A stretch of 64,000 nt of DNA from Scyliorhinus canicula (taxonomy: Eukaryota). Under the pieces are notes generated by a model. The model saw only the letters and a program-made list of their open reading frames with translations, did no database searches and was not told the origin of the DNA. Numbering within the stretch: position 1 is the stretch's first letter; each line of letters starts with the position of its first letter. This document shows, piece by piece, positions 5,629 to 61,256 of this stretch. The stretch covers positions 109,395,811 through 109,459,810 of the forward strand of contig NC_052162.1 in assembly GCF_902713615.1 (NCBI RefSeq), written 5' to 3'. Both the position numbers and the translations under genes were made by a program.

Positions 5629-5944
5629 GGGCAGCATGGTAGCACAAGTGGATAGCACTGTGGCTTCACAGCGCCAGGGTCCCAGGTTCGATTCCCCGCT
5701 GGGTCACTGTGCGGAGTAGGCACGTTCTCCCCATGGCTGCGTGGGTTTCCTCCGGGTGCTCCGGTTTCCTCCCACAGTCCAAAGATGTGCAGGTTAGGTG
5801 GATTGGCCATGCTAAATTGCCCTTAGTGTCCAAAAAGGTTAGGATGGTTATTGGGTTGCGGGGATGGGGTGGAAGTGAGGGCTTAAGTGGGGCAGTGCAG
5901 ACTCGATGGGCCAAATGGCCTCCTTCTGCACTGTATGCTCTATG
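5629..5944 (+). mobile_element. HE1-type V-SINE
   Basis: Head, V-domain and tail present. Confidence 0.85.
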
Positions 5945-6202
5945 AAAAACAGCTTCTTCCCCACTGTTAGCAGACACCTAAACGACCCTCTTATGGATTG
6001 ACCTAATTAATGCGACACCCCTGTATACTTCACCCGATGCCAGTATTATGCAGTTACATTGTGTACCTTGTGTGGCCCTATTATGTATTTTCTTTTATTT
6101 CCTTTTCTGTTCATTTACTTAATGATCTGTTAATCTGCTTGCAGAAAAATACTTTTCACTGTACCTTGGTACACATAACAATAAACAAATCCAAATCCAA
6201 AA
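5945..6202 (+). mobile_element. Rex1-type LINE 3' end
   Basis: aaaaacagcttcttccc... and gtaccttggtacac...aataaacaaatcc, matching the 3' UTR at 37935-38520. Confidence 0.65.
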
Positions 6203-6639
6203 AAGATGAAATGGAGATTTCATGGAGCTGTTCAATATTATGTGTTGGGGCAATGGAGATGGGTGCTTTGATAGAGCACATATGGAGAAACTGTTTCCAC
6301 TGACGAGGATCGTGATTGAAGATAATCAAAGAAAGACAGATTTGTATTTAGAAAGCACCCTGGACGTCAGAGTGAAATCATTATTACAATGGCTAACATG
6401 TGCTCCTATGTTTTGTGGTCTATTCCTTTGTAACCTGGCTATTCCCAGCCTCCCACATAAAGATGGGGTCATTCAAAAATTAAAACCAAGCTTATCTAGT
6501 TGGTTTTTACCCCCAAATTAATACCTGAAACTGCACTGGAGTTTATTAACATTAGCAGAAAAAGACCATAAGAGGCCACAATAAACATGGTTCTGTCCAT
6601 TGAATTGATTTAACAGCAAAATCCAACCACTGTAGTTAT

Positions 6640-6810
6640 TTGTGAACTCGCTGGTGTCTCAGAAGATGGGATAACTGAGTGAATCCCTTCCCACTCCGGG
6701 AACAGGTGAACGGCCTCCCTCAATGTGAATTCGCTGGTGTGTCTGCAGGGTGGATGACCAAGTGAATCACTTCCCATAATAGGAACAGGTGAATGGTCTC
6801 TCCCCAGCGT
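6640..6810 (-). pseudogene. Orphaned last fingers of ZNF-A
   Basis: Degenerate GERPF-type fingers ending cagcgagttcacaaataactacagtg, like the end of ZNF-B. Separated from the ORF by an L1 insertion. Confidence 0.75.
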
Positions 6811-8470: not shown

Positions 8471-10642
8471 TCATTTAAAACGTCCCTCATCAGTGTGGAC
8501 TCGTTGATGGTTTATCAGGTTCCCGGAACTTCTGAAGCGCCTCTCACAGTCTGGACATTTAAAAGGTCTCTCATCAGTATGAACTCGTTGATGGGACATC
8601 AGGTTCCGGGAACTTTTAAAGCACTTCCCGCAGTCTGGGCATTTAAATGGTCTCTCATCAGTGTGAATGCATTGATGGGACATCAGTTGCGAGGAACGTT
8701 TAAAGCACTTCTCGCAGTCTGGGCATTTAAAAGGTCTCTCATCCGTGTGAAGTCGTTGATGGAACATCAGGTTCCTGGAACTTTTAAAGCACTTCCCACA
8801 GTCTGGACATTTAAAAGGTCTCTCATCAGTATGAACTCGTTGGTGCGAGATAAGGTTCCCAGAACTTTTAAAATACTTCCCGCAGTCTGGGCAGCTAAAA
8901 GGTCTTTCATCAATGTGAACCCGTTGATGGGACAGCAGTTGCGAGGAACGTTTAAAACACTTTTCGCAGTGTGGACATTTAAACGGTCTCTCATCAGTGT
9001 GAACTTCTCGATGGCACATCAGGTTCCCGGAACTTTTAAAGCATTTCCCGCAGTCTGAGCATTTGAAAGATCTCTCATCATTGTGAACTCGCTGATGGGA
9101 GATTAGGTTCCAGGAACTTTTAAAGCACATCTCACAGTCTGGGCATTTAAATGGTCTTTCATCAGTGTGAATGCTTTGATGGGACATCAGGTTCCAAGAA
9201 CTTTTAAAGCATTTCCCGCAATCTGAACATTTAAAAGGTCTCTCATCATTGTGAACTCGCTGATGGGACAACAGGTTCCGGGAACTTTTAAAGCACATCT
9301 CACAGTCTGGGCATTTAAATGGTCTTTCATCAATGTGGACGCGTTGATGGGACATCAGATCCGAGGAACGTTTAAAGCACTTCTCGCAGTCTGCACATTT
9401 AAAAGGTCTCTCATCCGTGTGAACCCGTTGATGGGACATCAGGCTTCTGGAACTTTTAAAGCATTTCCCGCAGTCTGAACATTTAAAATGTCTCTCATCA
9501 TTGTGAACTCGCTGATGGGACATCAGGTTCCGGGAACTTTTAAAGCACATCTCACAGTCTGGGCATTTAAATGGTCTTTCATCAATGTGGACGCGTTGAT
9601 GGGACATAAGTTCCGAGGAACGTTTAAAGCACTTTTCGCAGTCTGGACATTTAAACGGTCTCTCATCAGTGTGAACTTGTCGATGGGACATCAGGTTCCT
9701 GGAACTTTTAAAGCAATTTGTGCAGTCTGGACATTTAAAAGGTCTCTCATCTGTGTGAACTCGTTGGTGGGACATCAGGTTCCCGAAACTTTTAAAACAC
9801 TTCCCGCAGTCTGGGCATTTATAAGGTCTCTCATCAATGTGAACCCGTTGATGGGACATCAGTTCCGAGGAACGTTTAAAGCACTTTTCGCAGTCTGGAC
9901 ATTTAAACGGTCTCTCATCAGTGTGAACTTGTCGATGGGACATCAGGGTCCCGGAACCTTTGAAGCATTTTTCACAGACTGAGCATTGAAAAGATCTCTC
10001 ATCATTGTGAACTCGCTGATGGGACATCGGGTTCTGGGAACTTTTAAAGCACATCTCGCAGTCTGAGCATTTAAAAGATCTCTCATCATTGTGAACTCGC
10101 TGATGTGACATCAGGTTCTGGGAACTTTTAAAGCACATCTCACAGTCTGGGCATTTAAATAGTCTTTCATCAGTGTGAACACGTTGATGGGACATCAGGT
10201 TCCCGGAATGTTTAAAGCATTTCCCGCAGTCTGGGCATTTAAAAGGTCTCTCATCATTGTGAACCCGCTGATGGGACATCAGGATCCGGGAACTTTTAAA
10301 GCACATCTCACAGTTTGGGCATTTAAATGGTCTTTCATCAGTGTGAACGCATTGATGGGACATCAGTTCCGAGGAACGTTTAAAGCACTTTGCGCAGTCT
10401 GGACATTTAAAAGGTCTCTCATCTGTGTGAACTTGTCGATGGGACATCAGGTTCCCGGAACTTTTAAAACACTTCCCGCAGTCTGGGCATTGAAAAGGTC
10501 TCTCAGCAGTGTGAACTCGTTGATGGGCCATCAATTCCCAGGAGCGTTTAAAGCACTTCCCACAATCTGGGCATTTAAAAAGTCTCTCATTAGTGTGAAT
10601 TATCTTCCAGAAATTTTGAAGAACTTCACGTAGTTTGAGCAT
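8471..10642 (-). CDS. Tandem C2H2 zinc-finger protein ZNF-A (25 fingers, no effector domain)
   Basis: 723-aa stop-free ORF: 23-aa leader plus 25 x 28-aa CxxC...HxxxH repeats (consensus [28 protein letters not shown]). The upstream part of the exon (to the acceptor at ~11265) is decayed and interrupted by a SINE. The stop is TGA in place of a finger Cys codon. Expression is unproven. Confidence 0.8.
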   Translation of the reverse strand: MLKLREVLQNFWKIIHTNERLFKCPDCGKCFKRSWELMAHQRVHTAERPFQCPDCGKCFKSSGNLMSHRQVHTDERPFKCPDCAKCFKRSSELMSHQCVHTDERPFKCPNCEMCFKSSRILMSHQRVHNDERPFKCPDCGKCFKHSGNLMSHQRVHTDERLFKCPDCEMCFKSSQNLMSHQRVHNDERSFKCSDCEMCFKSSQNPMSHQRVHNDERSFQCSVCEKCFKGSGTLMSHRQVHTDERPFKCPDCEKCFKRSSELMSHQRVHIDERPYKCPDCGKCFKSFGNLMSHQRVHTDERPFKCPDCTNCFKSSRNLMSHRQVHTDERPFKCPDCEKCFKRSSELMSHQRVHIDERPFKCPDCEMCFKSSRNLMSHQRVHNDERHFKCSDCGKCFKSSRSLMSHQRVHTDERPFKCADCEKCFKRSSDLMSHQRVHIDERPFKCPDCEMCFKSSRNLLSHQRVHNDERPFKCSDCGKCFKSSWNLMSHQSIHTDERPFKCPDCEMCFKSSWNLISHQRVHNDERSFKCSDCGKCFKSSGNLMCHREVHTDERPFKCPHCEKCFKRSSQLLSHQRVHIDERPFSCPDCGKYFKSSGNLISHQRVHTDERPFKCPDCGKCFKSSRNLMFHQRLHTDERPFKCPDCEKCFKRSSQLMSHQCIHTDERPFKCPDCGKCFKSSRNLMSHQRVHTDERPFKCPDCERRFRSSGNLINHQRVHTDEGRFK

Positions 10643-13539: not shown

Positions 13540-14350
13540 GAGACTTGTTTTTAAACTTGCTGGGCCAGAGAAGTAACTGATCAGATTGTCTCAATTTTAA
13601 TGAGAAATAAGGTGAGGATGGAGGAATTGGGGAAAGGGAGAGCCGTTCAAAACAAACTAACTTGTCTTGGAAATTTTAAGGAGATTGTCTTCCGGTGGCT
13701 GGATTTACTGAGCAGTCACAGGAACGTGGCTCTCCTCTTTGTAACTTCAAACTATGCATCTTTAACCCGAAAATTGATGGCCAAGCCAACAAAAAAAAAA
13801 ACCCCCGCCCCAAAAAACCACCACATACCCAAGGATATCGCCTGGAACCAGCAAAATGGTCAAAGAGAGAATAAGGACAGCAAGAGCCCGGGGAGAAAAG
13901 ACGGGCTGGCGGATATAAAGAGCGAGGCAGAGCAAGATATGGTGGAGAGAGCAGAACCACCAATGCAAAAATTGATTTCCCCAGGAATAGGTCAATGGAT
14001 GGAGCTCCTAACACAGAAGTTCCTAAAACACAGAGATGCCATTAAGAAATAAATTATGGCAAAGGTAAAATCGTGGTTGCAGATGCCTTGGCCTCCTTCA
14101 AAGGAAGAGGAGGGAGCGATGACTGGAGATGCAGGATTCAACAGTGTGAAAATTCTCGAGGACAGCAACCAACCAGGAAGACGAGATCACCTCAATGGAA
14201 GTAGAGGTGTCAAGGTTGGTATTGGCCCAGGAAGCACTCAAGGGGAAGGTGGAGGACCAAGAGAACAGGTCACGTCACCAGAACCTCAGGGTTGTGGGAC
14301 TACCGGAGGGCACAAACCCAACTGAGTATGTGGCCCAGATGCTGGGTGAG
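13540..14350 (+). mobile_element. L1-clade 5' region/ORF1 fragment
   Basis: Peptide LKGKVEDQENRSRHQNLRVVGLPEG (L1 ORF1 motif). Confidence 0.7.
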
Positions 14351-15460
14351 CAGAAGAGATTGATGCGTCAAATTAAAGCACATGGAATGGGATAGTGAAT
14401 TGAGATGGTTAGTGGACTGGTTAACAAACAGGAAACAAAGAGTAGGATATAGAGGGTCTTTTCAAATTGGCAGGCAGTGACTAGTGGGCTGCCGCAGGAA
14501 TCAATGCAATATATAGTAATGAGGAAGGAACAAAATGTAATATCTCTAAATTTGCAGATGACACCAAGTTGTGTGGGAGGGTGAGATGTGAGGAAGATGC
14601 AGAGATCCTTCAGTGTGATTTGGACAAGTTGAGTGAGTGGGCAAATGAATGGCAGATGCAGTATAATTTGGATAAATGCGAGGTTATACACTTTGGTAGC
14701 AAACACGAGAAGGCAGACTATTATCTGAACAGCCAGAAATTAGGAGAGGGTAATGTGCAATGAGACCTGGGTGTCCTCGTACACCAGTCACTGGAGCTAA
14801 GCATGCAGGTATAGCAAGTGATAAAGAAGGCAAATGGTATGTTGCCCTTCGTAGTGAAAGGATTGGAGTACAGCAGCAGGGATGTTTTGACACACTTATA
14901 TAGAGTCTTGGTGAGGCCACACCTGGAATATTGTGTCAAGGTTTGGTCTCCTATTCTGAGGAAGGATGTTCTTGCTTTAGAGGGAATGCAGCAAAGATTT
15001 ACCAGACTGGTTCCTGGGATGGCGGGACTGACATATGAGATATTGAATCGGTTGGGATTGTATTCGCTGGAGTTCAGATGCATGAGGGAGGGGATCTCAC
15101 AGAAACCTTTAAAATTTGATCAGAACTGAACAAGATAGATGCAGAAGGATGTGCCCGATGGCGAGTATGTACAGAATTGTCACAGTCTGAGGATACGGGT
15201 AGACCATTTAGGACAGAGTTGAGGAGAAATTTCTTCCCCAGAGAGTGGCGAGCCTGTTACCACAGGAGGTAGTTGAGCCCATGTTTTCAAGAAGCAGTTA
15301 CACATAGCACTTTGGGTGAAGGTGATCAAAGTATATGGGGGCGGGGAGGGGAAAGTGGGAGTAGACTTTTGATTTGGATAATCAGCCGTGTTCATAATGA
15401 ATGGCGGAGCAGGCTCGAAGGGCCGAAGAGCCTCCTCCTGCTCCAATTTTCTATCTTTCG
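14350..15460 (+). mobile_element. CR1 LINE 3' fragment
   Basis: KFADDTK, WANEWQMQYN and LVRPHLEYCVKVWSP peptides. Confidence 0.88.
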
Positions 15461-16609
15461 ATACAATGCTCTTGCTGGACTGAGATCCCATCCTGGATGA
15501 ACAGGATTTTCTGCCATTTAAATATTGGGAAGACTGAAGCCAATGTCTTCAATCTCCCGTACAAATTTCACTCCATGCACACCAACACCATCCCTCTTCC
15601 TGAAAACTGTTTGAGGCTCAGCCAGACTGTCCACAACCATGGTCAAATATTTAATTTTAAATTTGACTTTTAAGGCTGCATTTAGTGTTGTCGTTTCCAG
15701 TGTCTGTGTCTATGCCTGGTGGCCCGCCCATTTCATATATTTTTATTGACTTTGGAGCAGTTGAATGCAACTAAGCGGCTTGCTCCACCATTTCAGAAAA
15801 CATTTGGGAGTCAGCCAGTTTGCTGCGGATCTGAAGTCACATGTCAGCCAGACAAGGTGAGGATGGAAGATTTTGTCCCTAAATAGCATTAATGAACTGA
15901 ATGGTTTTTATATTTTGTACTTTTATCAAATTGAAATTCCACCACATGCCATGATGGGATTCAAACTTGGGTCCCCAGAGCATTACTCTATGTCTCGACA
16001 ATTACCCTGGGTGTCCCCACAAGATGACCTACAACCACACATCAGTGCCATCTCCAAATATGGGTGTCCTTCTGTGAGATGACTGAGACCTCACACTGCA
16101 TTTTTTTTGGAAAATACATCTTGACATCCTCAAGGATATTTTAAAAAATGTATTAGCTTGACAAAGAGTTTTTAAAACCACTATGTCTGTCTGTGACTCC
16201 TGAACTAAAATAGCTATCTGGCTGCAACAAAGAAACTTCCTTATCTCTGAAGAGACATTTTGATTCTGGACTCTAGAACTCAAATGAAATACACTGTTCT
16301 CTGTGATCTATGCAGTCAATCTTTCTTTTCTCTGTCTATATTTTGCTGTATGTATGCAAAGGAGGCAGAGTTGAGACAGTCTAATCTCGTTTTGAGTGTC
16401 TGTAAACAGAATAACACTTTGAGTTCATCCAATCTGAAGGGATTGGGAAATTTGCCATTGTTTATAATTTACTTGCAACAAGTCTTGTTTGTCCATCACC
16501 CCTGTGCTCAGTGGACTACAAAAGACTTCTGGTTCAGAAGCACGATAAAATCAAAAGTCCTAATTTTCCTTCATGGTTGTGACCTTAAAGTGCATGCCCA
16601 CATGTCACA

Positions 16610-16951
16610 GGGCAGCACGGTAGCATGGTGGTTAGCATAAATGCTTCACAGCTCCAGGGTCCCAGGTTCGGTTCCCGGCTGGGTCACTGTCTGTGCGGAG
16701 TTTGCACGTCCTCCCCGTGTGTGCGTGGGTTTCCTCCGGGTGCTCCGGTTTCCTCCCACAGTCCAAAGATGTGCGGGTTAGGTGGATTGGCCATGCTAAA
16801 TTGCCCGTAGTGTCCTAAAAAGTAAGGTTAAGGGGGGGTTGTTTGGGTTACGGGTATAGGGTGGATACGTGGGTTTGAGTAGGGTGATAATTGCTCTGCA
16901 CAACATCGAGGGTCGAAGGGCCTGTTCTGTGCTGTACTGTTCTATGTTCTA
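16610..16951 (+). mobile_element. HE1-type V-SINE (young)
   Basis: Full length, near-identical to 57144-57488. Confidence 0.9.
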
Positions 16952-24641: not shown

Positions 24642-26027
24642 TTAGTTGTGAACTCGCTGATGTGTAAGCAGGTAGGATGACCGAGTGAATCCCTTCCCAC
24701 ACTGGGAGCAGGTGAACGGTCTCTCCCCACTGTGAACTTGCCGGTGTCTCCGCAGGTGGGATGACCGAGTGAATCGCTTTCCACACTGGAAGCAGGTGAA
24801 CGGTCTCTCCCCACTGTGAACTCGCTGGTGGGACAGCAGGGTGGATGACCGAGTGAATCTCTTCCCACACTGCAAACACGTGAACCGCCTCTCCCCACTG
24901 TGAACTCGCTGGTGTTCCAGCAGGTTCGATGACTGAGTGAATCTCTTCCCACACTGGGAGCAGGAAAATGGTCTCTCCCCACTGTGAACTCGCTGGTGGG
25001 ACAACAGGGTGGAATACTGAATGAATCCCTTCCCACACTGGGAGCAGGTGAATGATCTCTCCCCACTGTGAACTCGCTGGTGTGACTGCAGGGTGGAAGA
25101 CTGAGTGAATCCCTTCCCACACTGAGAGCAGGTGAATGGTCTCTCTCCAGTGTGAACTCGCTGATGTGACAGCAGGGTGGAACGGTGAGTGAATCCCTTC
25201 CCACAGTGGGAACAGGTGAACGGCCTCTCCCCACTGTGAACTCGCTGGTGTGACTGCAGGGTGGAAGACTGAGTGAATCCCTTCCCACATTGGGAGCAGG
25301 TGAATGGTTTATCCCCACTGTGAACTCGCTGGTGTTCCTGCAGGTGGGATGACCGAGTGAATCCCTTTCCACACTGGGAGCAGGTGAATGGTCTCTCCCC
25401 ACTGTGAACGCGCTGGTGTACAGTGAGTTGAGATGACCACCTGAACCCAGTCCCACACTGAGAGCACCTGAAGGGTTTCTCATCAGTGTGAACACGTTGA
25501 TGGGATATCAGTTCCGAGGAACTTTTAAAGCACTTCCCACACTCTGGGCATTTAAAAGGTCTCTCATCAGTGTGGACTCGTTGATGGGACATCAGTTTCC
25601 AGGAACTTTTAAAGCACTTCTCACAGTCTGGGCATTTAAAAGGTCTCTCATCAGTGTGAACCTGTTGATGGGACATCAGTTCTGAGGAACTTTTAAAGCA
25701 CTTCTTGCAGTCTGGGCATTTAAAAGGTCTCTCATCAGTGTGAACTCGTTGATGGGACATCAGGTTACCGGAACTTTTGAAGCACTTGCCACAGTCTGCG
25801 CATTTAAAAGGTCTCTCATCAGTGTGAACTCGCTGGTGTGTCAGAAGGTTAGATGATCGAGTGAATCCCTTCCCACACTCGGAACAGGTAAATGGTCTCT
25901 CCCCAGCACGAATCCGCTGCCGTCTCAGTAGGTGTGATGATTCATCGAATCCCTTCCCACACTGGGAACTGATGAATGATCTCTTTCCAGTGCGAACTCG
26001 CTGGTGTGTCAGCAATGCTGATGACAT
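24642..26027 (-). CDS. Tandem C2H2 zinc-finger protein ZNF-B (15 intact fingers)
   Basis: 461-aa ORF: degenerate leading fingers, then 15 intact fingers (4 of the LMSH/TDERP type, mostly SGERPF linkers afterwards). Ends HQRVHN*, matching the paralog ends. Acceptor tttcacAG at 26364-26363. Confidence 0.85.
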
Positions 26028-26629
26028 AGTGAACCCCTTCCCACCTCAGAACAGGTGAATGATCTCTCTCCAGTGTGACACCGTCTATGTACTTCCAGGA
26101 TTGATGGGTAATTGAATCCCTTCCACAATCCTTATATTTCTACAATTTATTCCCGTTGTGACTATATTTATGGTCTGATAGGTCAAATAATCATCTGAAT
26201 CCTCGAACACGTGTATGGTTTCTCCCCACTGTGAATGGTGCTTTTTCCTTCCAGGTTCAAAATCCGATGATATTCAGACTACAATAAATTGGGCGACTCT
26301 GTCAGATCCTGATGTGATGTTTGGTTTCAGTTTCCCAACTGCAAGTCCTTCCCTTCTATACCCTGTGAAATTGATGTAAAACAGAAAAAAGTGAGTGAGA
26401 GAACCCACAACAACACAAAAGCAGGTTGTGAAATGATTCTGGTAATTTGTGGGGCCGGCACTAGGAAAAACTGACCATGAAAATCAAACTTTGCAGGATT
26501 GACAGGGCTGAGTTTGCCGTTGTAATTTCCGTTGTCTACGTCTATGCCTGACCTGATTAATAACTTTTTATTGTCTTTGGAGCAGTTAGATACAACAAAG
26601 GGGCTTGCGCCGACATTTCAGAGGATGGC

Positions 26630-34808: not shown

Positions 34809-35377
34809 TGTCGTGTGAGTGTCCCTTTTTAGAAATAATTTTCTCTTATCAGTGATGTCATTGTGTTGGTGGAGCTGGGCTGTGGCTCTGGGAGTTGGTT
34901 TTACTTTCGCTTTGGGTTTGGAGTTGGTTTGTGGCTCGAGTTTTTACTTCCGTTTTCACATTTGGCTACTGTGGACTCGGGACAGAAGTATTTTGGCCTG
35001 TCTCTATTTTCAATTTTAAGAGTTATTCCAAGGAAGAAACCCAATTATTATCATTAGCTACTGTTTTGGTTGATGGGATCTTGTTATAGAATTAGAACAG
35101 TTAAAGGGGGAATTTATTAAAGGGTTATACATAGAATACTGTAGCTGTGTAGGGTCATTATGTTTATATTTGATAATTCTTACTGTGGACGTTTATACAT
35201 ATGTTAACTAAATTCGTAGAATAAAGCTTGTTTTTTGATTAAAAGTGCCTGAGAACTCTGTTGAATAACACCTGAAAGGCACGCTCTTTTGATCATCATA
35301 ACCAAAATCAATAAACGGTTGCAGGCCAGGGGGACTCCATAATATACTTTGGAGTTGATAAACCCTGGCCCAGAACA
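34809..35377 (+). mobile_element. Solo LTR
   Basis: TGTCGTG...AGAACA termini, 4-bp TSD CCGG on both sides, internal AATAAA at ~35220 and ~35310. Confidence 0.8.
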
Positions 35378-37457
35378 CCGGTCAAGGGAGAGGCCGCGCC
35401 GTTGCCTGCTGTCAGCTTAGCCATCAGCATGGAGGAGAGGGCGCATCTATGCAGGCGCAAGACACTAAAACAGGCGCAATGGAAGACTCGACAGGGGTCA
35501 AGCCAGGTTACCCCCAGCCCTGTAAGCCTTCAGGACCTCAAGCCACTGGCTCAGACACGGCCTCATCTTCCACCCTGCAAAATCTGCAGCCCGACAATAC
35601 CTTACATCGGGTGCTAAGCTGTTAGTCAACCTGCGAGGTCTTCGGAACTCCTTGCAGATGCTGTCTGTCTTGTACCAGAAACTTCTGAAAGTCTGGAGCA
35701 TGGTCACCATGCGCCGTAGCTCTCCCCTGTCAGGAGTAATGACTCTTGTTAGGGATCCACTCCTCTGGAATTCGCACTTCCTCCAATATCCACTCAGGTG
35801 GCTGGTGGAGTGGAAGACTGGCTGCCGGGGTGACCAAGATCAGGAACGTGCTGGGTGGCGGTGGAGTGGGCTGGATGATACCCTACAATTTGGTTGAAGG
35901 TACAGCGGTGGCCGTCCGACTCGCGACATATGCCATCCAGGCCGCACGGTCCCGAGGTTGCACAGGCCTGCGGTGGCCTCATGTCTGAGTGGATCCCTGC
36001 TCGGTCGGAATTCCATATTGGTCCCAACCCCTTCATCGAGCCCGACAAGTTCTGTTATCTCAAGCAGAATCCCGTCTGTTGCCGCTAAGTTATATTCACT
36101 GGCGAACTGGACATATGTTACTGAGGCAAAAGTTAATGAAGTTGCTGTCAGAAAACCATAAGTTATTTCTGAAGCAAATAGAGCAACAACTGTTGGAAGA
36201 ACAAATGTCAGGTGGCCATGAGCAGCTCCTGGGAGTGAGCACAGCAGCTAAGAGGGGCCAGCCTACTTGGGTTATGTCTGGTTTGCATGCTTTGTCCAAA
36301 ATTAAGTTCAGCTGAATTAACAGACAATCTGTTCTGATCAACAGTAAAAGGAGGAACAATCCAAATTCCGAATCCTTCATTCCCCTCGGTGAAGCGGGTA
36401 TAATTCTGTAATGAAGACTGTTTTAGGCCGAGACTTAAATGTGAGGGTGAAATGAAATTGACACAGGCCATTTGAATTCGGTTTGCTGTGGTTGTGATTG
36501 CTGCATTTCTGTGTGTGACCCTCTCTCTCTCTCTCCTTCCCAAATACAGGGATGAGAGAGAGAAGGACCAAAAGAGTGGGGGGGGGGGGGGGGGGGGGGG
36601 GGGAAGGAAGTGTAAGAGGGAGATGTGAGAAAGGGAGGGGAGATAGACAGAGAGAGGGTGGAGGGAGAGGGAGGTTGTGAAAAAGAGAGGCTTTCTCTCC
36701 TTTTCTGCCTTCTTTCCATTCTTGTCTCTCTCTCTGTCTCCCCAGCGTTCTGCCAATATCTGTCCATCTCTCTCCAGCATTTGAGTGTCTCTTTATGGGA
36801 TATGGCACATATCCCACAATTGCCCTGCCTCTGTGACTGCAGATGGCACTCCCGCCCCCCCCCCATATCTCTCCACTAACCCTATAACTGTCCACCCTGC
36901 GTCGGGGGACGTCCAGGAGCTGGCGCCTGAAAACTCCTCACAACTGCTGGCATGGAGGGGATGGCACCTCCGCGCAGTCAAAGGGCGCTTTGAAGAATGT
37001 GATGCAATATACCATGAAGGTCAGGCGGGGATATGCTTGTCCCGGTTGAGTCTGGTGATTCCGTGCCATTGGATGCTGGTTTGTGTGCCATTGTTCCACT
37101 CTGCCCTGCCATCACCTAGCAATATCCGCAGCCCTTCGACATTCTGTTGTCGGGTGGCCGGACTAGGCAATGCTTCTGCACGGGCCCCAGAAGGGGCGGC
37201 AGTGCAGCATACATCCCCGAGCTGGAGGGCAGTTCACCCCAGCCACAACCTTGGGGGATAGGCATCTTGGAGGGAGGGTACAATGCGGAGTGGCCTTCAG
37301 TGATGGAGGTCTCCTTGGCATGTGACCCCCATCCCCGCAGGCGGTGTCATTCGAAGAGGACGGAGTGATGAATGGATGACGCCCCAATACATCCCCATAG
37401 ACCTTACGCCCAGCCCCGTAAGAAGAAATCTAAGGGGAAGGTCAAAAAGTCCCTGGT

Positions 37458-37650
37458 ATCTCTTCTCGGCCTTTTGGCTAAGGTGAGCGCGAGTTCAGGT
37501 GTAATGCCTGGATCTGGTATGTCTCTTGTGAGGACCATGAATTGGATTCAATGTGAATTGTTTTTTGGAGCAGGTAAGGAGCTGGATTAGGGGTTTGCCC
37601 CTGTCCACACTCTGAGCTCTCGCTTTGTAACTCTGATAAAATAATAAAAA
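37458..37650 (+). pseudogene. U2 snRNA-derived sequence at the 3' end of a Tx1-like element
   Basis: ATCTCTTCTCGGCCTTTTGGCTAAG is a 24/25 match to the U2 5' end as recalled. Further colinear blocks follow (ATCTGGTATGTC...GAGGAC, TTTTTGGAGCAGG, TGGATTAGGGGTTTGCCCCTGTCCAC), then an A-rich tail. Confidence 0.8.
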
Positions 37651-37934
37651 CATGTTTTTAATCCCCAGGTATGTTGCTGTCCCCGAGCAGGATAATTTGG
37701 GGCCGATTGTGCACACCAGATACGTTCATTGTCTCTTCGAAGGTGGGGGGGAGGGGGGGGGGGGGGGGGGGGTCAGCAGTAGTGGTAACTCTCTTATTTT
37801 GGGGTCGTGTAGGTTGTGGCAAGGAAGGTGCCCCAACCTCTCCGTCCAAACTTGCGATGCCGACCTGCCTAGCCACCATCCCGGAATTTCTGGGGTTGCT
37901 CCCAATTCATTCCACGTCTGCGCAACACGCTCCT

Positions 37935-39790
37935 GGAGTATTCTATTTGTTTTGCCACGTGCACCGAGGTACAGTGAAAAATATTGTTCTGTGCAGTCTA
38001 GACAGATCATTCCATACATAAAAAAACATTGTACATTTATATATGCCCCATGTAAACACATAGACACAGGCATCGGGGGAAGCATACAGGAGTGTAGTAC
38101 TGCACTCCCGTATGGGCAGCAAGGTAGCATAGTGGTTAGCACAATTGCTCCACAGCTCCAGGGTCCCAGGTTCGATCCCCGGCTTGGGTCACTGTCTGTA
38201 CAGAGTCTGCACGTTCTCCCCGTGTGTGCGTGGGTTTCCTCCCACAGTCCAACGATGGGCAGGTTAGGTGGATTGGCCATGATAAATTGCCCTTAGTGTT
38301 GGGTGGGGTTGCTGGGTTATGGGGATAGGGTGGGTGTGTGGGCTTGGGTAGGGTGCTCTTTCCAAGAGCCGGTGCAGACCCGATGGGCCGAATGGCCTCC
38401 TTCTGCACTGTAAATTCTATGATTCTACTCAGTGGAGAAGCTGTGTGAAGAGATCAGATCAGTCCATAAGGGGGTCATTACAGATTCTGGTAACAGCGGG
38501 AAAGAAGCTGTTTTTGAATCTGTGCGTGTTCTCAAACCTTTGAATCTCCTGCCCGATGGAAGAGTGAATAGCAGAGGTGGGAGGGGGTCTTTGATTATGC
38601 TGCCCGGCTTCCCAAGGCAGCAGGAGGTGTAGACGGTCAATGAATGGGAGGTGGATTCGCATGATAGACTGGGCTGTGTTCACGACTCTCTGTAGTTTCT
38701 TACGGTCTTGGGCCGAGCAGTTGCCGTAATAGGCTGTGATGCAGCCAGAAAGGATGCTTTCTAAGGTGCATCTGTAAACATTGTAAGAGTCAATGTGAAA
38801 ATGCTGAATTTCCATAGTTTCCTGAGGAAGTACAAAACGCTGTTGTGCTTTCTTGGTCGTAGTGTCGATGTGGGTGGACCAGGACAGAATGTTGGAGATG
38901 TGCACACCTAGTAATTCGAAGCTGTCAGCCATCTCTACTTTGGCACCATTGATGCAGACAGGTGTGTGTATGATGCTTCGCTTCTTGAAGTTAATGACTA
39001 ACTCTTTAGTTTCGCTGACATTGAGGGAGAGATTGTTGTCATTACACCACTCCACTAGGTTCTCTATCTCCCTCTTATACTCTGAGTCATTGTTGTTCTA
39101 GATCCGACGCACTACGGTCGTATAATCAGCAAACTTTTAGATGGAAATGGAGCCAAATTGTGCTACACAGTCTTGTGTGTATAGCGAGTGTAGTAGCAGG
39201 CTAAGTATGCAGCATTGCGGGGCTCCGGTATTAAGGACTATCGTGGAGGAGGTGCTGGATTGTGGTCTATAGATTAGGAAGTTGAGGATACAGTTGCAGA
39301 GGAGCCAAGTCCTAGGTTTTTGAGCTTTGATATGAGCGTTGCTGGGATTATGGTGTAAAATGTGGAGCTGTAGTCAACGAATAGGGGTCTGTTATACGTG
39401 TCCTTGTTGTCGGGATGTTCCAGGGTGATTTGTCAGGCCAGGCATCTGCTGTGGACCAGTTGTGGCGGTATGCAAATTGCAGTGGATCAAGGCATTCTGG
39501 CAGTGTGGAGTTGATGTGTCTCATGAGCAACCTCTCAAAGCACTTCATAATGATAGGTGTCAAGGTCGCTCAACAGTAGTCGTTGAGGCACGTTGTCTGG
39601 TTATTTTTTGGCACTGGTATGATGGTGGTCTTCTTGAAGCAGGTGGGAACCTAGGAACAGAGTAGGGAGAGATTGAAGATGTCCACGAACACATCCACCA
39701 GTTGGTCCGTGCAGGATCTGAGTGCACGACCAGGGACCCCGTCGGGACCCGTCGCTTTCTGAGGGTTCAAGAGTAAGGATAGGGAACATT
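37935..39790 (-). mobile_element. Rex1/Babar-clade LINE (RT plus 3' end) with a SINE inserted
   Basis: Peptides [11 protein letters not shown]...LDPLQFAYR and WCNDNNLSLNVSETKELVINF...LSWSTHI...KAQQR. Confidence 0.85.
38114..38426 (+). mobile_element. HE1-type V-SINE
   Basis: Full length, inside the Rex1 3' region. Confidence 0.85.
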
Positions 39791-40099
39791 TTGATTGGCT
39801 GCGAATGCTGGGTAACAGCCCTGCCATTCAATGGTGTTGTATGTTCCGATTACAATAGGGGGGGGGGCGACAATATATCAAATTAATGAAGTAATTCATA
39901 CTGCAACCAAAGTGCACAGGGCCTCCATGATATTTCTTCCCCGGGTGTTATTACAGGCAAAACAAACCACTGCAATTCGATGTAAACCAACTGGATTTTC
40001 AGCAGGTGGGGTGACCAGTGATTATTTTTTTCCCATTGAACTGAACATTTAAACCGTGTTTTGCCAGTAAGACTGCACTGATTGTGGATTAAGTGGGAC

Positions 40100-43000
40100 A
40101 TATAGGGACTGGGAATTGGTCTTGGACTGAGGGTAGGGGGAGATGGAAGATTGTATATAGTTCTATTTTCTATTTCATGTTATATGTGTTAATGGGGTGA
40201 AGTTGCCTGTTTGGGAGTAGGAGTTGGGATTTTTTGCAAAGGCGGTTTTCTGGGATTTTTGTGTCTCCACAGAGTTTGTTTGTTTCAAGGGAATTTCTTT
40301 GTTTTCCTGGGACTGGATAAGGGGTAGGAGATTGGAGCCTGACCAGGGGCCTCCAGACTTGCAAGCTCCAGCTGGCTAGTTAAAGGGAGTGTGGTGAGGG
40401 AAGGGGCTGCAGACATTGTAGCCTGGTCGAACAGGTTTTGATGGGCCTGGGAGGTGCGAAAGGTGGGGGGGAGGAGAGGACCGGTATTGGGAGTGATGTT
40501 TTCGAGAGGAAGTGGTTGGGGGATTCTGGGAGGAGGGGGGAGTTTGGGGTTCGAAGGCAAGAATGAAACGGAACCGACGAGGCCCAATGGACAGGGCCCG
40601 GAGCTATGATGATGGCGGATAGGAGGGACAGGGGAGTGAGAGACCCCCGGTTAGAATAGTTACATGAAACATGAAGAGTTTGGGGGGGGTGGGGGTGGGG
40701 GGGGGGGGGGGCAGTTAATGAGGCTCAGGACAGATTAGGTGAGCCAAGTATTTCTGGGTAGCAGTTTTGGTGGATAAGAGGGTGAGTTTCCAGATGGATA
40801 AGGTGGTGGTGGTCCAGGGGGGCAGATATGTGACAGCAACGGGGGGACATTGGAGGGGAGGTTGGTGGCATTGGCAAGTGTTATTGGCCCTAACTGGGTT
40901 GGTGCAAGATTTGTGAGGAATGTGCTCATGGCTATTCCGGACTTGGATGGCATGAGCTAACAGTGAAGGGGGATTGGAATCTGATGCAAGAGCCAAGGAT
41001 GGACAGGTTGCAGCCTGGCTCACTTGTCCAGTCCGGGGGGGGGGGAGGCGGTTTGAAATTGACGATGCTTATGAGGGAAATGGGAGGGGTGGACGCTTGG
41101 AGGTTCTTGCACCCGAGGGAGCGGAGGTATTTATTTTTTCTCCTTTGCTCACTCGATGATAGACCCTTTTGTGGTAGGGAAGGCATTGCTGGCTGGGTAT
41201 CAGTGATCAGAGTATTCGGCAATTTATGCATATGGGGAGAAGGCAGGACCAACTTCAGAGGGAGGCGGCGGTGATGTAAATTGTCCAGATGCGGGATAGG
41301 ATGGGGAAATTGGTGGTGGCTCCCGACGAGATTAATAGGAGTTTTATGAAAAGCTGTAGAGGTCAGAACCACCAGGGGAGGTTCAGAGAAGAGGGAGTTC
41401 CTGGACGGATTGGAGTATCCCAGGCTGGAGAAGGAAGATGGGGCCAGAGGTCAGTGGGGAAACAGGAGGTAAAGGAGGCAATTGGGAGGATGCAATCGGG
41501 GAAGGCAGCAGGCCCAGATGGGTTCCCATGGGAATATTTACAAAACTTAAAGACAAATTGGCGCCACTGATGGTGGGGTTGTTTGAGGAGGCGATAGGGA
41601 AGGAGTGCGACCACAAACATTGGGCAGGCTTCGATCTCCCTGCTGCTGAAGATGGAGCATAGGGTATCTTTGTACCCGGCGATTTATTACTATATATATC
41701 AGAGTCGAGTATGTCGGTGGGGAACATAATGGGACTTCTCTGAAGATCTTTTTGAAGATATAATTTGAACTTGGGGAAGACTGAATATTTTGTGGTGTCC
41801 TGGTCGGGAGTGGGGATGGGAGGGCTGCCATTTTGGAGGGCCGCAACCCACTTCAGGTACTTGGGGGTGCAGGTGGTGCGGGATGGGGGCACCGTAGGTA
41901 CAATTTTACTAGTTTGGTGGTGAGAGTGAAAGCGGACTTCGCAAGGTGGGACAACCTCCCTCTGTCACTGGCGGGTCAGGTGCAGGCGATTAAAATGAAT
42001 GTGCTGCTGTAATTTCTGTTTTTATTCCAGTGCCTGCCGGTCTTTTTGCTGAAGGAATCCTTCAGGGAAGTGGACAAGTTGATCACCTCGCTTATTTGGG
42101 GGTAGGCGGTCAGGAAGATGGTCCTGCAGAGAGGGCGGGGTGCCTGGGCCGCCTGAATTTATTATACTATTACTGGGTGGCGAATGCGGAAAATGTGAGG
42201 GGTTGGGTCGTGGAGCGGGGCGGGGAAGAGAGAGAGAAGAGTTCCAGTGGGTTAGGTTGGAGGAAGGTCTGTGTAGGGAGTCAGGGTTGAGGGCGCTGGC
42301 AAAGGCAGCACTCCCGATGACTCTGGGCAAGTACTCTGGGAGTCCGGTAGTGCTGGCAACACTGAAGATTTGGAGGCAGCTGAGTCAGCATTTTAAGTTG
42401 GGAGTTGGGTCAGGGGAGATGCCGATCAGGGGGAATCACTGGTTTGAGCCGGTGAGGCTGGATGGGAGGTTTTGGAGATGGGGATCAGGGTATGAAAGGA
42501 CCTGTTCCCGGGGGGATGTAATGCGACTGAAATATGGACTGGGGGAAGGGTTTAGGTACCTGCATCTCCAAGACTTTGCTAGGAAGAAGGTTCCAAGCTT
42601 CCCGACAGTGCCAACCCGCTTGTTGTTAGAAGAGGTATTGACGGCGGTGGGAATGGAGAAGGGGGTGGTGTCAGCGATTTACAGGAAGATTTTGTTGGAG
42701 GACCAGGTGTCCATGGAAGGGATTAAAGCCAAGTGAGAAGAAGAGTTGGGTGAGGTAATGGAAGAAGGTCTGTGGTGTGTGATGCTCCGAAGGGTGAAAA
42801 CCTCAACCTCATGCACAAGTTTGGGGCTGATACAGCTGAAGGTTGTGTCTCAGGCGCACCTCCCGAGCGCGAGGATGAGCCAGCTCTTTGAGGGAGTGGA
42901 GGACATATGCGAGTGTCGTGGGAGGGGTTCTGCAAATGTATATATGTTTTGGTTCTGTCCGAAGCTGGAGGTATTGGAGGGAGGTCTTTAGTATCATCTC

Positions 43001-44269: not shown

Positions 44270-45415
<1,146 letters not shown>

Positions 45416-54606: not shown

Positions 54607-55275
54607 GAATAATCAGCAAGTCTGTGGCCACTCTCACCAATTGAAAGCGTCACAATGCCCGGCTGATTGACGGCGGCCCCGGACCAATAGGGGGAGAGAG
54701 TGGGCGGTCCTGGAAGACCAAGTAGGAGAGGATGAACCTCCAAGCAGAGTGAGCGAGGGACGGGGCCGGGTTAAACTGGAAATGGATCATGCGCAGTGTG
54801 AGTAATGGTGAAGCAGCGAAGATATGATGCAGAGTCGGTCCGTGGATTAAAATGGCGGAACGGAGAGAGTTATATATGCGGCGGGTGAGCGGAGAAGTTT
54901 GAACTAGAAATCTCGAAAAATAGCTTCCTGTCTTCCGTTTACACTGGGCAGGGTACAGTTTTTATTCACAGTTACAAACCGAGTTCACGGATGCCATGTT
55001 TTCAAAAGACATCTTGCAGCAGGCGCATGCGTGACAACCATGTTGTGTGGATCATGTGCACCAAAGCGTCTGCGCGGCCGCCATGTTTATTCGGGGCTAT
55101 TTTTTTCAATCTTAGATTCAAAGAAGGTTTACAGTGCAGAAAGAGGCCTTTAACCGATCATGTCTACTCCGGCCAATCAGGAGAAAATACATATTTTAAT
55201 CTCGTTTTCCAACAACTGGTCAGGTTACATCACTTCAAATTCAGATCTGTGAGCATGCACTACAAGGTTTCTCAG
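54607..55275 (+). promoter_or_regulatory. ZNF promoter/first-exon module, copy 4 (inverted orientation)
   Basis: Reverse-complement homolog of copies 1-3: cgtcacaatgcccgg, ggaccaatag, catgcgcag, AAAATGGCGG (YY1) and donor-like CGG|GTGAGC at ~54885. Intron homology continues to 55275. Confidence 0.65.
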
Positions 55276-57924: not shown

Positions 57925-60900
57925 AGAGGCGGGAGGTCTGATCATGGGGGGTCTTCAATATGGTGTTGGATCCTTCACTGGATCGGTCCAGCTCTAGGAC
58001 GGGTAGGAGGCCGGCGGCGGCCAAGGTACTGAGAGGGTTTATGGACCAGATGGGTGGGGTGGATCCATGGAGGTTTGTGAGGCCGAGGGCACGGGAGTAC
58101 TCTTTCTTCTCCCACGTACATTGGGTCTACTCTCAGATCGACTTCTTCGTGGTGAGTAGGGGACTGATTCCGAGAGTGGAGGAGGCCAAGTATTCGGCCA
58201 TTGCAATCTCCGACCACGCTCCGCATTGGATAGAGTTGGAGATGGGGGAGGTGCGGGACCAGCGCCCGTTGTGGCGGTTGGATGTGGGGTTGTTGGCGGA
58301 GGAGGAGGTGTGTAGGAGGGTCCGGGCAAGTATTGAGGGGTACCTCGAGGTGAATGATACGGGGGAGGTTCAGGTGGGGGTGGTCTGGGAAGCCCTGAAG
58401 GTAGTGATTCGTGGGGAGCTGATATCCATCCGGGCACAAAGGGAGAGGAGTGAGAGGGCTAGACTGGTGGGAAAGATGCCGGAGGTAGACAGGAGGTACG
58501 TAGAGGCACCAGAGGAGGGACTGTTGGGGGAGAGGCGCAGCCTGCAGGCTAAATTTGATTTGCTGACCACAAGAAAGGCGGAGGCACAGTGGAGGAAGGC
58601 ACAAGGGGCAGTGTATGAACATGGTGAAAAGTCGAGTAGGATGCTGGCTCATCAGCTCCGCAAGCGGGATGCGGCTAAGGAAATTGCTGGAGTGAGAGAC
58701 AAGAGTGGGAATGTGGAGCGGAAGGGAGTAGAGGTGAATGAGGTCTTCAAGGGCTTTTACGGGGAACTGTACCGGTCGGAGCCAACGGTGGAGAGGAGGG
58801 GAATGGAGAGGTTTCTCGACGGGCTTTCTTTACCGAAGGTGCAGGAGGAGCAGGTGGAGGGGTTGGGGGCGCCGATTGAGCTGGAGGAGCTAGTTAAGGG
58901 GATCGGGCAGATGCAGTCAGGGAAGGCACCAGGGCCGGATGGGTTCCCGGTGGAATTTTATAAAAAGTTTGTGGACCTAGTGGGCCCCTTGCTGGTGCGG
59001 ACACTTAATGAAGCGTGGGAAGGGGGGACTTTGCCCCCGACAATGTCGCGGGCGCTGATCTTGTTAATCTTAAAAAGGGACAAGGACCCCCAGCAGTGTG
59101 GTTCATACAGGCCCATATCTCTCCTCAACGTAGATGCAAAGGTGCTGGCAAAAATCCTGGCCACCAGGATAGAGGACTGTGTGCCAGGGGTTGTACACGA
59201 GGACCTTCGATAGAGTGGAGTGGGGGTACTTATGGGAGTTGTTGGGGAGGTTTGGATTTGGTGAAGGGTTTATTAGATGGGTGAGGCTGCTATATGAGGC
59301 CCCGATGACGTGCGTGGCCACGAATGGGAGGAGGTCGGAGTACTTCCGGCTTTACCGAAGGACCAGGCAGGGTTGCCCCCTGTCCCCCTTGTTGTTTGCA
59401 TTGGCAATCGAGCCGCTGGCGATGGCGTTGAGGGATTCAGAGAGGTGGAGAGGTTTGGTGTGAGGTGGGGAGGAACATAGGGTGTCGTTGTACGCTGATG
59501 ACCTGCTACTGTATGTGGTGGACCCGGTGGGAGGGATGCCGGGGGTGATGGAGCTGCTAGCTGAGTTTGGGACTTTTTCAGGTTATAAACTAAATTTAGG
59601 CAAGAGTGAGGTGTTTGTGGTGCACCCTGGAGACCAGGAGGAAGGAATTGGTAGGCTCCCGCTGAGGCGGGCAGGGGAGAGTTTTAGGTACCTGGGGGTG
59701 CAGGTGGCCAGGGACTGGGGGACTCTTCAGAAACATAATTTCACCAGGCTTGTAGATCAGATGGAGGAGGAGTTCAAGAGGTGGGACATGCTGCCATTAT
59801 CGTTGGCGGGGAGGGTGCAGTCCGTCAAAATGACGGTGCTTCCGAGGTTCTTGTTCCTCTTTCAGTGCCTGCCCATCTTCATCCCCACGGCCTTCTTTAG
59901 GAGAGTGACTAGCAGTATTTTGAGCTTTGTGTGGGCACATGGGACTCCGAGAGTGATGAGTGTTTTCCTGGAGCGAGGGAGGGATAGAGGCGGGCTGGCG
60001 CTGCCCAACCTTTTGGGGTACTATTGGGCGGCCAATGTGTCAATGGTGCGTAAATGGGTGATGGAGGGGCGGCGTGGAAAAGAATGGAGATGGCGTCATG
60101 TAGAGGTACGAGCCTGGGTGCCATGGGAACGCCGCCGTTGCCGCTCTCCCCTAAGAGGTATACCACGAGCCCGGTGGTGGCGGCGACCCTAAGAATCTGG
60201 GGACAGTGGAGATGGCATAGGGGAGAAACAGGGGGCTCGATGGAGGCTCCATTGGGTGGCAATCATCGGTTCATCCCGGGGAACAAGGATGGGGGATTTA
60301 GGGGGTGGCAAAGGGTGGGCATCAGTTAATTGAGGGAGGTTTGCGGGCCTGGGGGAATTGGAAGATAAATTTGGGCTTCCCCAAGGGAACATGTTCAGAT
60401 ACTTGCAGGTAAAGGCGTTTGCTAGGCGACAGGTAGAGGGATTCCCTTTGCTGCCCTTGCGGGGGACGATGGACAGAGTGCTTTCGGGGGTGTGGGTCGG
60501 AGAGGGAAAGGTGTCTGACATCTATAAGGTAATGCAGGAGGTGGAGGAGTCGTCAGTGGAGGAGCTGAAGGCTAAATGGGAGGGGGAACTTGGGGAGCAG
60601 ATAGAGGACGGGACTTGGGCGGATGCCTTGGAAAGAGTCAACTCTTCCTCTTCATGTGCGAGGCTTAGTCTCATCCAATTTAAGGTGCTGCACCGGGTCC
60701 ACATGTCCGGGACTACGATGAGTAGGTTCTTTGGGGGTGAGGACAGGTGCACCAGATGTTCGGGGAGTCCAGCGAATCATGTCCATACGTTCTTGGCATG
60801 CCCAGCACTGGAAGAATTCTGGAAGGGGGTGGCGGGGACGGTGTCGAGGGTGGTTGGATCCAGGGTCAAACCAGGGTGGGGACTCGCGATTTTCGGAGTT

Positions 60901-61256
60901 GCGGTGGAGCCGGGAGTGCAGGAGGCGAAAGAGGCCGGTGTCCTGGCCTTTGCGTCCCTAGTAGCCCGGCGGAGGATCTTGCTGCAGTGGAAGGATGCGA
61001 GGCCCCCAAGTGTGGAGACCTGGGTCAATGACATGGTGGGATTTATAAAGCTGGAAAGGGTCAAATTTGCCCTGAGAGAATCAGTACAAGGTTCTATAAA
61101 CGGTGGCAGTTGTTGTTGTTAATATGTTGGGTTGTTCATTGAGGAGGGGCGAAGGTTCATGATTGTTGTCATTATTGTTATTGTTGGTATTTTAGTATGG
61201 TTTGATGTTGTATAAATTCAAAAACTTTTCAATAAAAATTATTTTTAAGAAAAAGA
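57925..61256 (+). mobile_element. 5'-truncated L1-clade LINE ORF2 (EN C-terminus, RT, C-terminal region)
   Basis: YSQIDFF...SDH, PGPDGF, YRPISLLN, RQGCPLSP and LYADD motifs. Internal deletion at ~59205, a few stops/frameshifts, AATAAA plus A-rich tail at ~61231-61257. Confidence 0.92.

What the first reader, a model, noticed from the sequence alone, without database searches (positions are those of the whole stretch)
37458..37650. U2 snRNA-derived module forms the 3' end of a Tx1-like retrotransposon
Seen: directly after Tx1 ORF2-like sequence and before an A-rich tail lies a colinear, diverged U2 copy. The first 25 nt match U2 (as recalled) at 24 positions, followed by stem IIb-like GTC(T)C...GAGGAC and the Sm-site region TTTTTGGAGCAGG. 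Stem III reads GGGG-TTTG-CCCC instead of U2 GGAG-CTTG-CTCC, a compensated A-U to G-C swap. The branch-point-pairing GUAGUA is altered (GTAATG), stem IIa is deleted and the Sm-site A is lost. Established: some Tx1 families (Keno) target U2 genes, and U1/U2-headed SINEs (SINEU) mobilised by Tx1 are described in crocodilians. Inference: this is either a shark Tx1 family that co-opted U2 as a structured 3' UTR (possibly for RNA stability or snRNP-protein recruitment) or a shark SINEU-like element. Retained structure with lost splicing determinants is what such co-option would predict.
Basis: partly seen in the sequence, partly recalled or inferred. Interest (0 to 1): 0.8.

Follow-up and report, generated by a model that had tools for sequence, protein, structure and literature searches.

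The report
Shark U2-derived SINE copy, not Tx1 tail
The stretch is one old, inert copy of an abundant short retroposon family descended from the U2 spliceosomal RNA; it sits in single-copy DNA and is not the tail of a Tx1 element, and such snRNA-derived SINEs are published only from crocodilians.

Summary
The U2-like sequence is real. Rfam's U2 model matches 37458-37658(+) end to end at 27.9 bits, below the gathering score of 46. A 21-nt exact match to the U2 5' end is unique in the window.

The Tx1 claim fails. Public DNA runs give single-copy depth for 36840-37391 and for 37760-37943. Depth is about a thousand-fold higher over about 37467-37645. A unique contig ends at 37453, just before U2 nucleotide 1. 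The upstream frames have no Pfam hit, and two pieces have no homologue among 5.8 billion proteins.

Other copies run colinear with this one over about 175 nt at roughly 88-90% identity, including the parts that are not U2. So this is a dispersed family of SINEU type (closest in design: crocodilian SINEU-3), not a lone pseudogene and not a LINE 3' UTR.

One new detail: the family-specific insert behind stem I pairs with the family-specific 3' region in a 17-bp helix that no shuffled module matched.

This scan had already noted the family at ten or more other places in this genome. I could not fetch other copies, so covariation, the partner LINE and TSDs remain untested.

The parts
36840..37457 (.). 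Upstream flank: single-copy DNA, not Tx1 ORF2
   Evidence: Depth is 3.6-5.5 (X7) and 8.8-8.9 (X1), against thousands over the module. X7 contig 21 covers 37011-37453 and stops there. No Pfam hit. No protein homologue for 36785-37258 or 37120-37365.
37458..37482 (+). U2 5' end and stem I (ATCTCTTCTCGGCCTTTTGGCTAAG)
   Evidence: The CM alignment to RF00004 positions 1-26 has posterior '*' throughout. The 21-nt exact pattern is unique in the window. Stem I is recovered in the MFE fold.
37483..37494 (+). Family-specific 12-nt insert (GTGAGCGCGAGT); with 37495-37502 it forms the 5' arm of a long-range helix
   Evidence: Not aligned by the U2 model. Pairs 37485-37502 with 37607-37625 in the MFE fold. 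An X1 contig runs colinear across it without gaps (record 3).
37495..37510 (+). Relic of the U2 branch-point-recognition region (TCAGGTGTAATGCCTG); GUAGUA is lost
   Evidence: Read and aligned by eye to U2 nt 27-42 as I recall it. The CM leaves this region unaligned.
37511..37536 (+). Stem IIa region deleted; stem IIb-like hairpin TCTC-TTGT-GAGG at 37522-37533
   Evidence: Hairpin in the MFE fold. Alignment to U2 nt 58-83 is by eye, from U2 as recalled.
37537..37583 (+). Sm-site region (GTTTTTTGGAGCAGG, 37560-37574); the A before the U run is lost
   Evidence: CM alignment. The family majority has T at 37553 and C at 37575; neither C nor the window's T is the G I recall at that site in real U2. 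So the depth here comes from family copies, not from U2 genes (table 3).
37584..37606 (+). Stem III; inner GGGG-TTTG-CCCC at 37590-37601
   Evidence: The CM alignment shows the inner stem paired and three outer pairs broken. Also in the MFE fold.
37607..37633 (+). Family-specific 3' region replacing stem IV; 37607-37625 is the 3' arm of the long-range helix
   Evidence: The stem IV columns are mostly non-pairs in the CM alignment. Duplex energy is -25.6 kcal/mol; 0.04% of arm shuffles and 0 of 100 whole-module shuffles reach it. The family majority has G at 37621, which would break one pair.
37634..37650 (+). A-rich tail (TGATAAAATAATAAAAA), including AATAAA at 37643-37648
   Evidence: Sequence. 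Alignments of other copies end at 37640-37645 (records 2, 3 and 14).
37651..37943 (.). Downstream flank: single-copy DNA with a poly-G tract at 37738-37786
   Evidence: Depth is 2.8 (X7) and 6.7 (X1) in 37760-37943.

Best explanation
37458-37650(+) is one retroposed, now inert copy of a high-copy, roughly 185-nt non-autonomous retroposon family that descends from a whole U2 snRNA. It keeps the U2 5' end and stem I, a IIb-like hairpin, the Sm region and inner stem III. It has a 12-nt insert behind stem I and has lost the branch-point sequence and most of stem IIa. Stem IV is replaced by about 27 nt that are not U2, followed by an A-rich tail with AATAAA. Shown here: the U2 descent, the unit's boundaries, its high copy number, the architecture shared by other copies, and the single-copy flanks. 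Inferred: master copies were transcribed by Pol II from a flanking or U2-type upstream promoter, because the unit has no internal Pol III promoter and carries an internal T6 run. The RNA was then polyadenylated and copied into new sites in trans by a poly(A)-using LINE of the L1/Tx1 clade through target-primed reverse transcription, as proposed for crocodilian SINEU and Tx1-Mar. This copy itself does nothing known.
For: U2 model match over the full model length with a perfect stem I. Unique 21-nt U2 5' match. Summed contig depth is 5,400-6,800 (X7) and 13,600-16,800 (X15) in the two bins holding the module, against about 3-11 in the flanks (table 2). At 37553, between 87 and 112 distinct contigs per run carry the family letter (table 3). 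Contigs from other loci align at 37467-37640/45 with 18-21 differences and 0-4 gaps, so they share the insert, the deletion and the 3' part that is not U2 (table 8, records 2, 3 and 14). The unique contig ends at 37453 (record 21). The unit ends in an A-rich tail. Runs of a second organism label hold 20-25% of the module's 31-mers. Published precedent: SINEU-3 is an internally deleted U2 plus about 40 nt of unique 3' sequence plus poly(A), and SINEU families carry internal oligo-T and no known promoter (PMC4494074). Unchecked notes of this scan report similar TSD-flanked copies at ten or more other places in the genome.
Against: Only this one copy could be read base by base. The summed contig depth is not a true copy number. 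The candidate TSD (CCCTGGTAT 37451-37459 / CCCAGGTAT 37664-37672) is no better than 37% of shuffles. The partner LINE, the promoter and the polyadenylation step are inference. Repbase and Dfam could not be consulted, so the family may already be catalogued.
Confidence: 0.85

Rival explanations
1. The module is the structured 3' UTR of a Tx1-type LINE, and this locus is a 5'-truncated LINE copy.
For: Some crocodilian Tx1 families do carry U1/U2-derived sequence, though at their 5' ends (PMC4494074). An unchecked scan note reports a Keno-like Tx1 with a U2 5' fragment elsewhere in this genome. The A-rich tail fits L1/Tx1-type retroposition.
Against: Upstream DNA is single-copy right up to U2 nucleotide 1. 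There is no RT, endonuclease or zf-RVT signal and no protein homologue. The only RT relic in the window is 20 kb away, at 57942-60189. LINEs that target U2 (Keno, Utopia) are followed by U2 from nucleotide 39 onward, not from nucleotide 1 (PMC4640811).
Confidence: 0.04
2. An ordinary, independently formed U2 processed pseudogene that decayed at random and lies here by chance.
For: U2 retropseudogenes with poly(A) and TSDs are known (cited in PMC4494074). The score is below Rfam's gathering threshold.
Against: Other copies share this copy's changes that depart from U2 across about 175 nt. At most positions the family majority equals the window's letter, and only four well-supported majority differences were listed. 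Divergence from U2 is very uneven: 24 of 25 at the 5' end, against unalignable segments further on.
Confidence: 0.05
3. A variant U2-like snRNA gene, or a member of a dispersed variant gene family, that is still expressed as a small RNA.
For: Stem I, the Sm-like run and stem III are kept. The fold is more stable than shuffles (z -2.46). RNA reads map to the module on both strands at low depth.
Against: The branch-point sequence, stem IIa and stem IV are lost. The upstream DNA is not shared with other copies, so no common promoter exists. The unit has an A-rich tail in place of a 3' box. RNA reads come from both strands, as expected for passive transcription of many copies.
Confidence: 0.03

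Closest known systems
SINEU-3 of crocodilians (Kojima 2015, PMC4494074)
   Same: A short retroposon made from a U2 snRNA with an internal deletion. It keeps the U2 5' end and the middle part, has about 40 nt of 3' sequence that is not U2, and ends in a poly(A) tail. It has thousands of copies, an internal oligo-T run, and no internal promoter.
   Different: The deletion is different: here about U2 nt 43-57, with a 12-nt insert after nt 26, against a deletion of about 50 nt after nt 32 in SINEU-3. That suggests an independent origin. Sequence homology to the SINEU-3 consensus, and a target preference for a Mariner element, could not be tested.
SINEU-1 and SINEU-2 (crocodilians)
   Same: An snRNA-derived head, a poly(A) tail, and presumed mobilisation by Tx1.
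   Different: Those families have only short U1/U2 heads on an unrelated body (SINEU-1), or a U1+U2 composite (SINEU-2). Here nearly the whole unit is colinear with U2.
Keno (Tx1 group) and Utopia, the U2-targeting LINEs (PMC4640811)
   Same: They associate LINE sequence with U2 sequence.
   Different: They insert into U2 genes at a fixed site and are followed by U2 from nt 39 onward. Here a U2 derivative starting at nt 1 stands alone in unique DNA, with no LINE beside it.
U2 processed pseudogenes and snRNA-L1 chimeric retrocopies of mammals
   Same: LINE-mediated retroposition of an snRNA, with an A tail.
   Different: Those are independent one-off events. Here a family amplified from master copies, with shared derived changes.
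Monomeric Alu (FAM/FLAM), an internally deleted 7SL RNA
   Same: The same evolutionary route: a small structured cellular RNA loses an internal part, gains an A tail and amplifies.
   Different: 7SL carries an internal Pol III promoter. U2 does not.

Membership tests
SINEU (snRNA-headed SINEs, Kojima 2015) | 5' part derived from U1 or U2 snRNA | tested here: met
   RF00004 match starts at model position 1, with a perfect stem I. The 21-nt exact U2 5' motif is present.
SINEU (snRNA-headed SINEs, Kojima 2015) | Short (<500 bp), non-coding, interspersed and multi-copy, with shared derived changes (not a sum of independent pseudogenes) | tested here: met
   A unit of about 185 nt with roughly thousand-fold higher depth than its single-copy flanks. 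Contigs from other loci are colinear over 175 nt with 18-21 differences. The majority letters are not those of U2.
SINEU (snRNA-headed SINEs, Kojima 2015) | 3' poly(A) tail | tested here: met
   A-rich end at 37634-37650, interrupted by T. Alignments of other copies end inside it.
SINEU (snRNA-headed SINEs, Kojima 2015) | Target-site duplications | tested here: inconclusive
   CCCTGGTAT / CCCAGGTAT lie at the expected positions, but the score is reached by 37% of shuffles.
SINEU (snRNA-headed SINEs, Kojima 2015) | Mobilised by Tx1 LINEs (shared target preference) | not testable with these tools
   Needs all copies and the LINE library of the genome. Only one copy was readable.
SINEU (snRNA-headed SINEs, Kojima 2015) | Sequence homology to the crocodilian SINEU consensus sequences | not tested
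Tx1 / L1-clade LINE (3' UTR) | ORF2 with APE endonuclease and RT upstream on the same strand, repeated together with the module | tested here: not met
   No Pfam hit, no homologue, and a single-copy upstream flank.
U2 spliceosomal RNA gene (RF00004) | Reaches the family's gathering score; keeps the branch-point sequence, Sm site and stems I-IV | tested here: not met
   27.9 bits against 46. The branch-point region and stem IIa do not align, and outer stem III and stem IV are broken.
Target-site junction of a U2-targeting LINE (Keno/Utopia) | The LINE 3' end is followed by U2 from nt 39 | tested here: not met
   The U2-like sequence begins at nt 1 and is preceded by unique DNA. The insertion site is taken from PMC4640811.

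The most novel reading that the evidence does not exclude
U2-derived SINEs arose independently in cartilaginous fishes and in crocodilians. On this reading the shark family is not a decaying pseudogene lineage but a selected RNA design. It keeps stem I, an Sm-like site and stem III, and it has gained a 17-bp closing helix between its own insert and its own 3' region. The master RNA would then use snRNP biogenesis (Sm-core assembly, export and re-import) or a 3' structure to reach and engage a Tx1/L1-type reverse transcriptase.
Probability: 0.15. Interest if true: 0.65.

Novelty: new member of a known kind. Interest (0 to 1): 0.4.

Why it matters
snRNA-derived SINEs are the only SINE class whose head has no internal Pol III promoter. 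In the searchable literature they are described only from crocodilians (PMC4494074). A second, apparently independent and abundant family in a cartilaginous fish would show that U2 is a recurrent raw material for retroposons. It would also give a second system in which to ask how promoter-less SINEs are transcribed and which LINE moves them. For annotation the point is practical: these copies should be masked as repeats and not called U2 genes or pseudogenes. The specific claim of this finding, a LINE with a U2 3' UTR, would have been more novel, but the evidence does not support it.

Tried and rejected
1. A Tx1 ORF2 upstream. Pfam on ten stop-free pieces of 35300-37590 gave nothing at E<=1. 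The search for homologous proteins on 36785-37258 and 37120-37365 gave nothing.

2. A second copy in the window. None was found with up to 3 mismatches or with blastn at word size 7. The one marginal hit was 24 nt of the 3' tail against 54960-54983(-), E 0.12, in a context that is not a LINE. I treated it as chance.

3. Fetching other copies through translated frames of the module. The search for homologous proteins and the exhaustive search of 1.84 billion representatives both gave 0 hits.

4. Fetching copies from metagenome contigs with two family-specific patterns. Both gave 0 hits.

5. TSD. Not significant.

6. Stem III 'compensatory' pair as evidence of selection. Rejected as insufficient: it is one pair in a sequence this diverged, and the species' own U2 was not available.

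7. SINEU consensus sequences from the paper's supplements. Not held.

8. tRNA scan of the window. None found.

Full report
**What is in the sequence**

Its parts, in order:

- ATCTCTTCTCGGCCTTTTGGCTAAG at 37458-37482
- a segment that is not U2, GTGAGCGCGAGT, at 37483-37494
- TCAGGTGTAATGCCTG at 37495-37510
- a small hairpin, TCTC-TTGT-GAGG, at 37522-37533
- GTTTTTTGGAGCAGG at 37560-37574
- GGGG-TTTG-CCCC at 37590-37601
- GTCCACACTCTGAGCTCTCGCTTTGTAACTC
- an A-rich end, TGATAAAATAATAAAAA, at 37634-37650

At Rfam's gathering thresholds nothing in the whole window matches. With E-value reporting on 37300-37800, the U2 model (RF00004) matches 37458-37658 over model positions 1-192. The score is 27.9 bits and E is 9e-4, against a gathering score of 46.

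That alignment shows three things. Stem I is perfect. The Sm region and inner stem III are kept. Three outer stem III pairs and most of stem IV are broken, and the branch-point/stem IIa region is skipped as unalignable.

The 21-nt U2 5' motif occurs once in the window, with none expected by chance.

By eye, against U2 as I recall it, the copy is colinear with U2. It has a 12-nt insert after nt 26 and has lost about nt 43-57 (stem IIa). GUAGUA has become GUAAUG. The U2 descent and the listed motifs are therefore confirmed.

**What lies upstream**

- Ten stop-free translated pieces covering 35300-37590 on both strands have no Pfam family at E<=1. That includes no RVT_1, no Exo_endo_phos and no zf-RVT.
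- The 158-aa piece 36785-37258 and the 82-aa piece 37120-37365 have no homologue among 5.8 billion proteins.
- The only reverse-transcriptase relic I found among the window's longest open frames is at 57942-60189(+), 20 kb away.

**Copy number and boundaries**

I laid Logan contigs of three DNA-type runs and raw reads of one RNA run on 35000-40500 at 85% likeness or more. The summed contig depths were:

| Region | X7 | X15 | X1 |
|---|---|---|---|
| 36840-37391 (three bins, upstream flank) | 3.6-5.5 | 0.8-11 | 8.8-8.9 |
| 37392-37759 (two bins holding the module) | 5,400-6,800 | 13,600-16,800 | 840-2,500 |
| 37760-37943 (downstream flank) | 2.8 | 0 | 6.7 |

An X7 contig of unique sequence covers 37011-37453 and ends there, five bases before U2 nt 1. 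Contigs from other loci, 346, 499 and 1,046 nt long, align to 37467-37640, 37469-37645 and 37467-37643. They show 18-21 differences and 0-4 gaps. They therefore share the insert, the deletion and the 3' part that is not U2.

At 37553, 37575, 37621 and 37641 nearly all depth carries another letter (T, C, G and G). At 37553 the X7 and X15 runs show 87 and 112 distinct contigs. The majority C at 37575, like the window's own T, is not the G I recall at that site in real U2. So this depth comes from family copies and not from U2 genes.

Summed contig depth is not a copy number. Even so, a ratio of 10^3 or more, together with about 100 distinct contigs, points to a family of at least many hundreds of copies and probably thousands.

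Runs of a second organism label hold 20-25% of the module's sampled 31-mers. That hints that a relative carries the family too.

**What it is**

A unit of about 185 nt that begins at U2 nt 1, ends in an A-rich tail, is highly repeated and lies between single-copy flanks is a retroposed copy of a U2-derived non-autonomous retroposon. It is not a LINE 3' end, and it is not a lone decayed pseudogene.

It is also not the junction of a U2-targeting LINE. Keno and Utopia are followed by U2 from nt 39 onward (PMC4640811).

The closest described design is crocodilian SINEU-3. That element has the U2 5' 32 nt plus a middle 83 nt after an internal deletion, then about 40 nt that are not U2, then poly(A). 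It has about 1,600 copies and was probably moved by Tx1-Mar LINEs (PMC4494074). The deletion and the insert differ here, which suggests an independent origin. I could not compare the sequences.

**How it most likely works (inference)**

U2 genes use an upstream Pol II snRNA promoter. The unit contains an internal T6 run (37561-37566), which would stop Pol III. So, as argued for SINEU, master copies must have been transcribed from flanking promoters.

The tail contains AATAAA at 37643-37648. A polyadenylated transcript would be a template for a poly(A)-using L1/Tx1-clade reverse transcriptase acting in trans. An unchecked scan note reports a Keno-like Tx1 elsewhere in this genome. I did not test this.

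The candidate TSD is CCCTGGTAT at 37451-37459 and CCCAGGTAT at 37664-37672. It sits where a TSD should sit, but it is no better than 37% of shuffles.

**Structure**

The MFE fold has an energy of -61 kcal/mol and a z-score of -2.46; 5 of 200 shuffles fold as well. It recovers stem I, the IIb-like hairpin and stem III.

It also pairs 37485-37502 with 37607-37625. The first arm is the family-specific insert plus the start of the branch-point relic. The second arm is the family-specific 3' region. The helix has 17 bp, with one 1x1 loop and one bulge.

Its duplex energy is -25.6 kcal/mol. That is reached by 0.04% of shuffles of one arm, and by none of 100 shuffles of the whole module scanned for any long-range duplex (mean -16.8, sd 2.5). 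This is the one feature that looks designed rather than decayed.

It rests on a single copy, however, and the family-majority G at 37621 would break one of its pairs.

The stem III 'compensated swap' is a single pair and is not significant by itself.

**Limits**

I could read only this one copy. Attempts to fetch others all failed: translated frames of the module and metagenome scans with two patterns. So covariation, subfamilies, target preference, TSD statistics, the partner LINE and the species' real U2 remain untested. Repbase and Dfam could not be consulted.

**Prior record**

In the searchable literature, SINEU is reported only from crocodilians, and no paper links it to sharks. This scan had already noted U2-headed SINE-like copies at ten or more other places in this genome. 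One follow-up reached the same reading. This window therefore adds one more copy, a clear refutation of the Tx1-tail reading at this locus, and the closing-helix observation.

Noticed in passing
window 37485-37502 with 37607-37625: A 17-bp long-range helix forms between the SINE's own 12-nt insert and its own 3' region. Duplex energy is -25.6 kcal/mol, unmatched in 100 shuffled modules. Whether the family conserves it is unknown; the majority letter G at 37621 would break one pair.
   Followed up: partly
window 38110-38430 (+), within the repeat-rich block 37944-39783: A tRNA-like-headed SINE (GGTAGCATAGTGGTTAGCA...GGTTCGATCCC...GTGGGTTTCCTCCCACAGTCCAA...) with enormous depth, 4-6 million summed in the DNA runs. 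It looks like the classical elasmobranch HE1-type SINE, from my own recall. ARAGORN does not call a tRNA there.
   Followed up: no
window 57942-61119 (+): A broken non-LTR retrotransposon. RVT_1 fragments lie in 57942-59210 and 59464-60189. Atlas neighbours carry Exo_endo_phos plus RVT_1. The clade was not determined, and the element is not adjacent to the U2 module.
   Followed up: partly
window 24645-26045 (-), 44384-45025 (-), 8474-10642 (-): Long C2H2 zinc-finger arrays, with 15 and 7 fingers in the two scanned. The window lies in a zinc-finger gene cluster, and another note of the scan covers 8471-10642.
   Followed up: no
window 54960-54983 (-): A 24-nt resemblance (87.5%, E 0.12) to the SINE's 3' end, including AATAAA: CTCGGTTTGTAACTGTGAATAAAAAC. 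There is no LINE coding signal beside it. Probably chance.
   Followed up: partly
window 36472-36839 and 37738-37786: Low-complexity purine-rich and poly-G tracts flank the unique DNA around the SINE. They give very high summed depth and break contigs.
   Followed up: no
window 37458-37650, public runs: Runs of a second coded organism (organism B, study P10) hold 20-25% of the module's sampled 31-mers. This suggests the family, or a close one, exists in another species.
   Followed up: no
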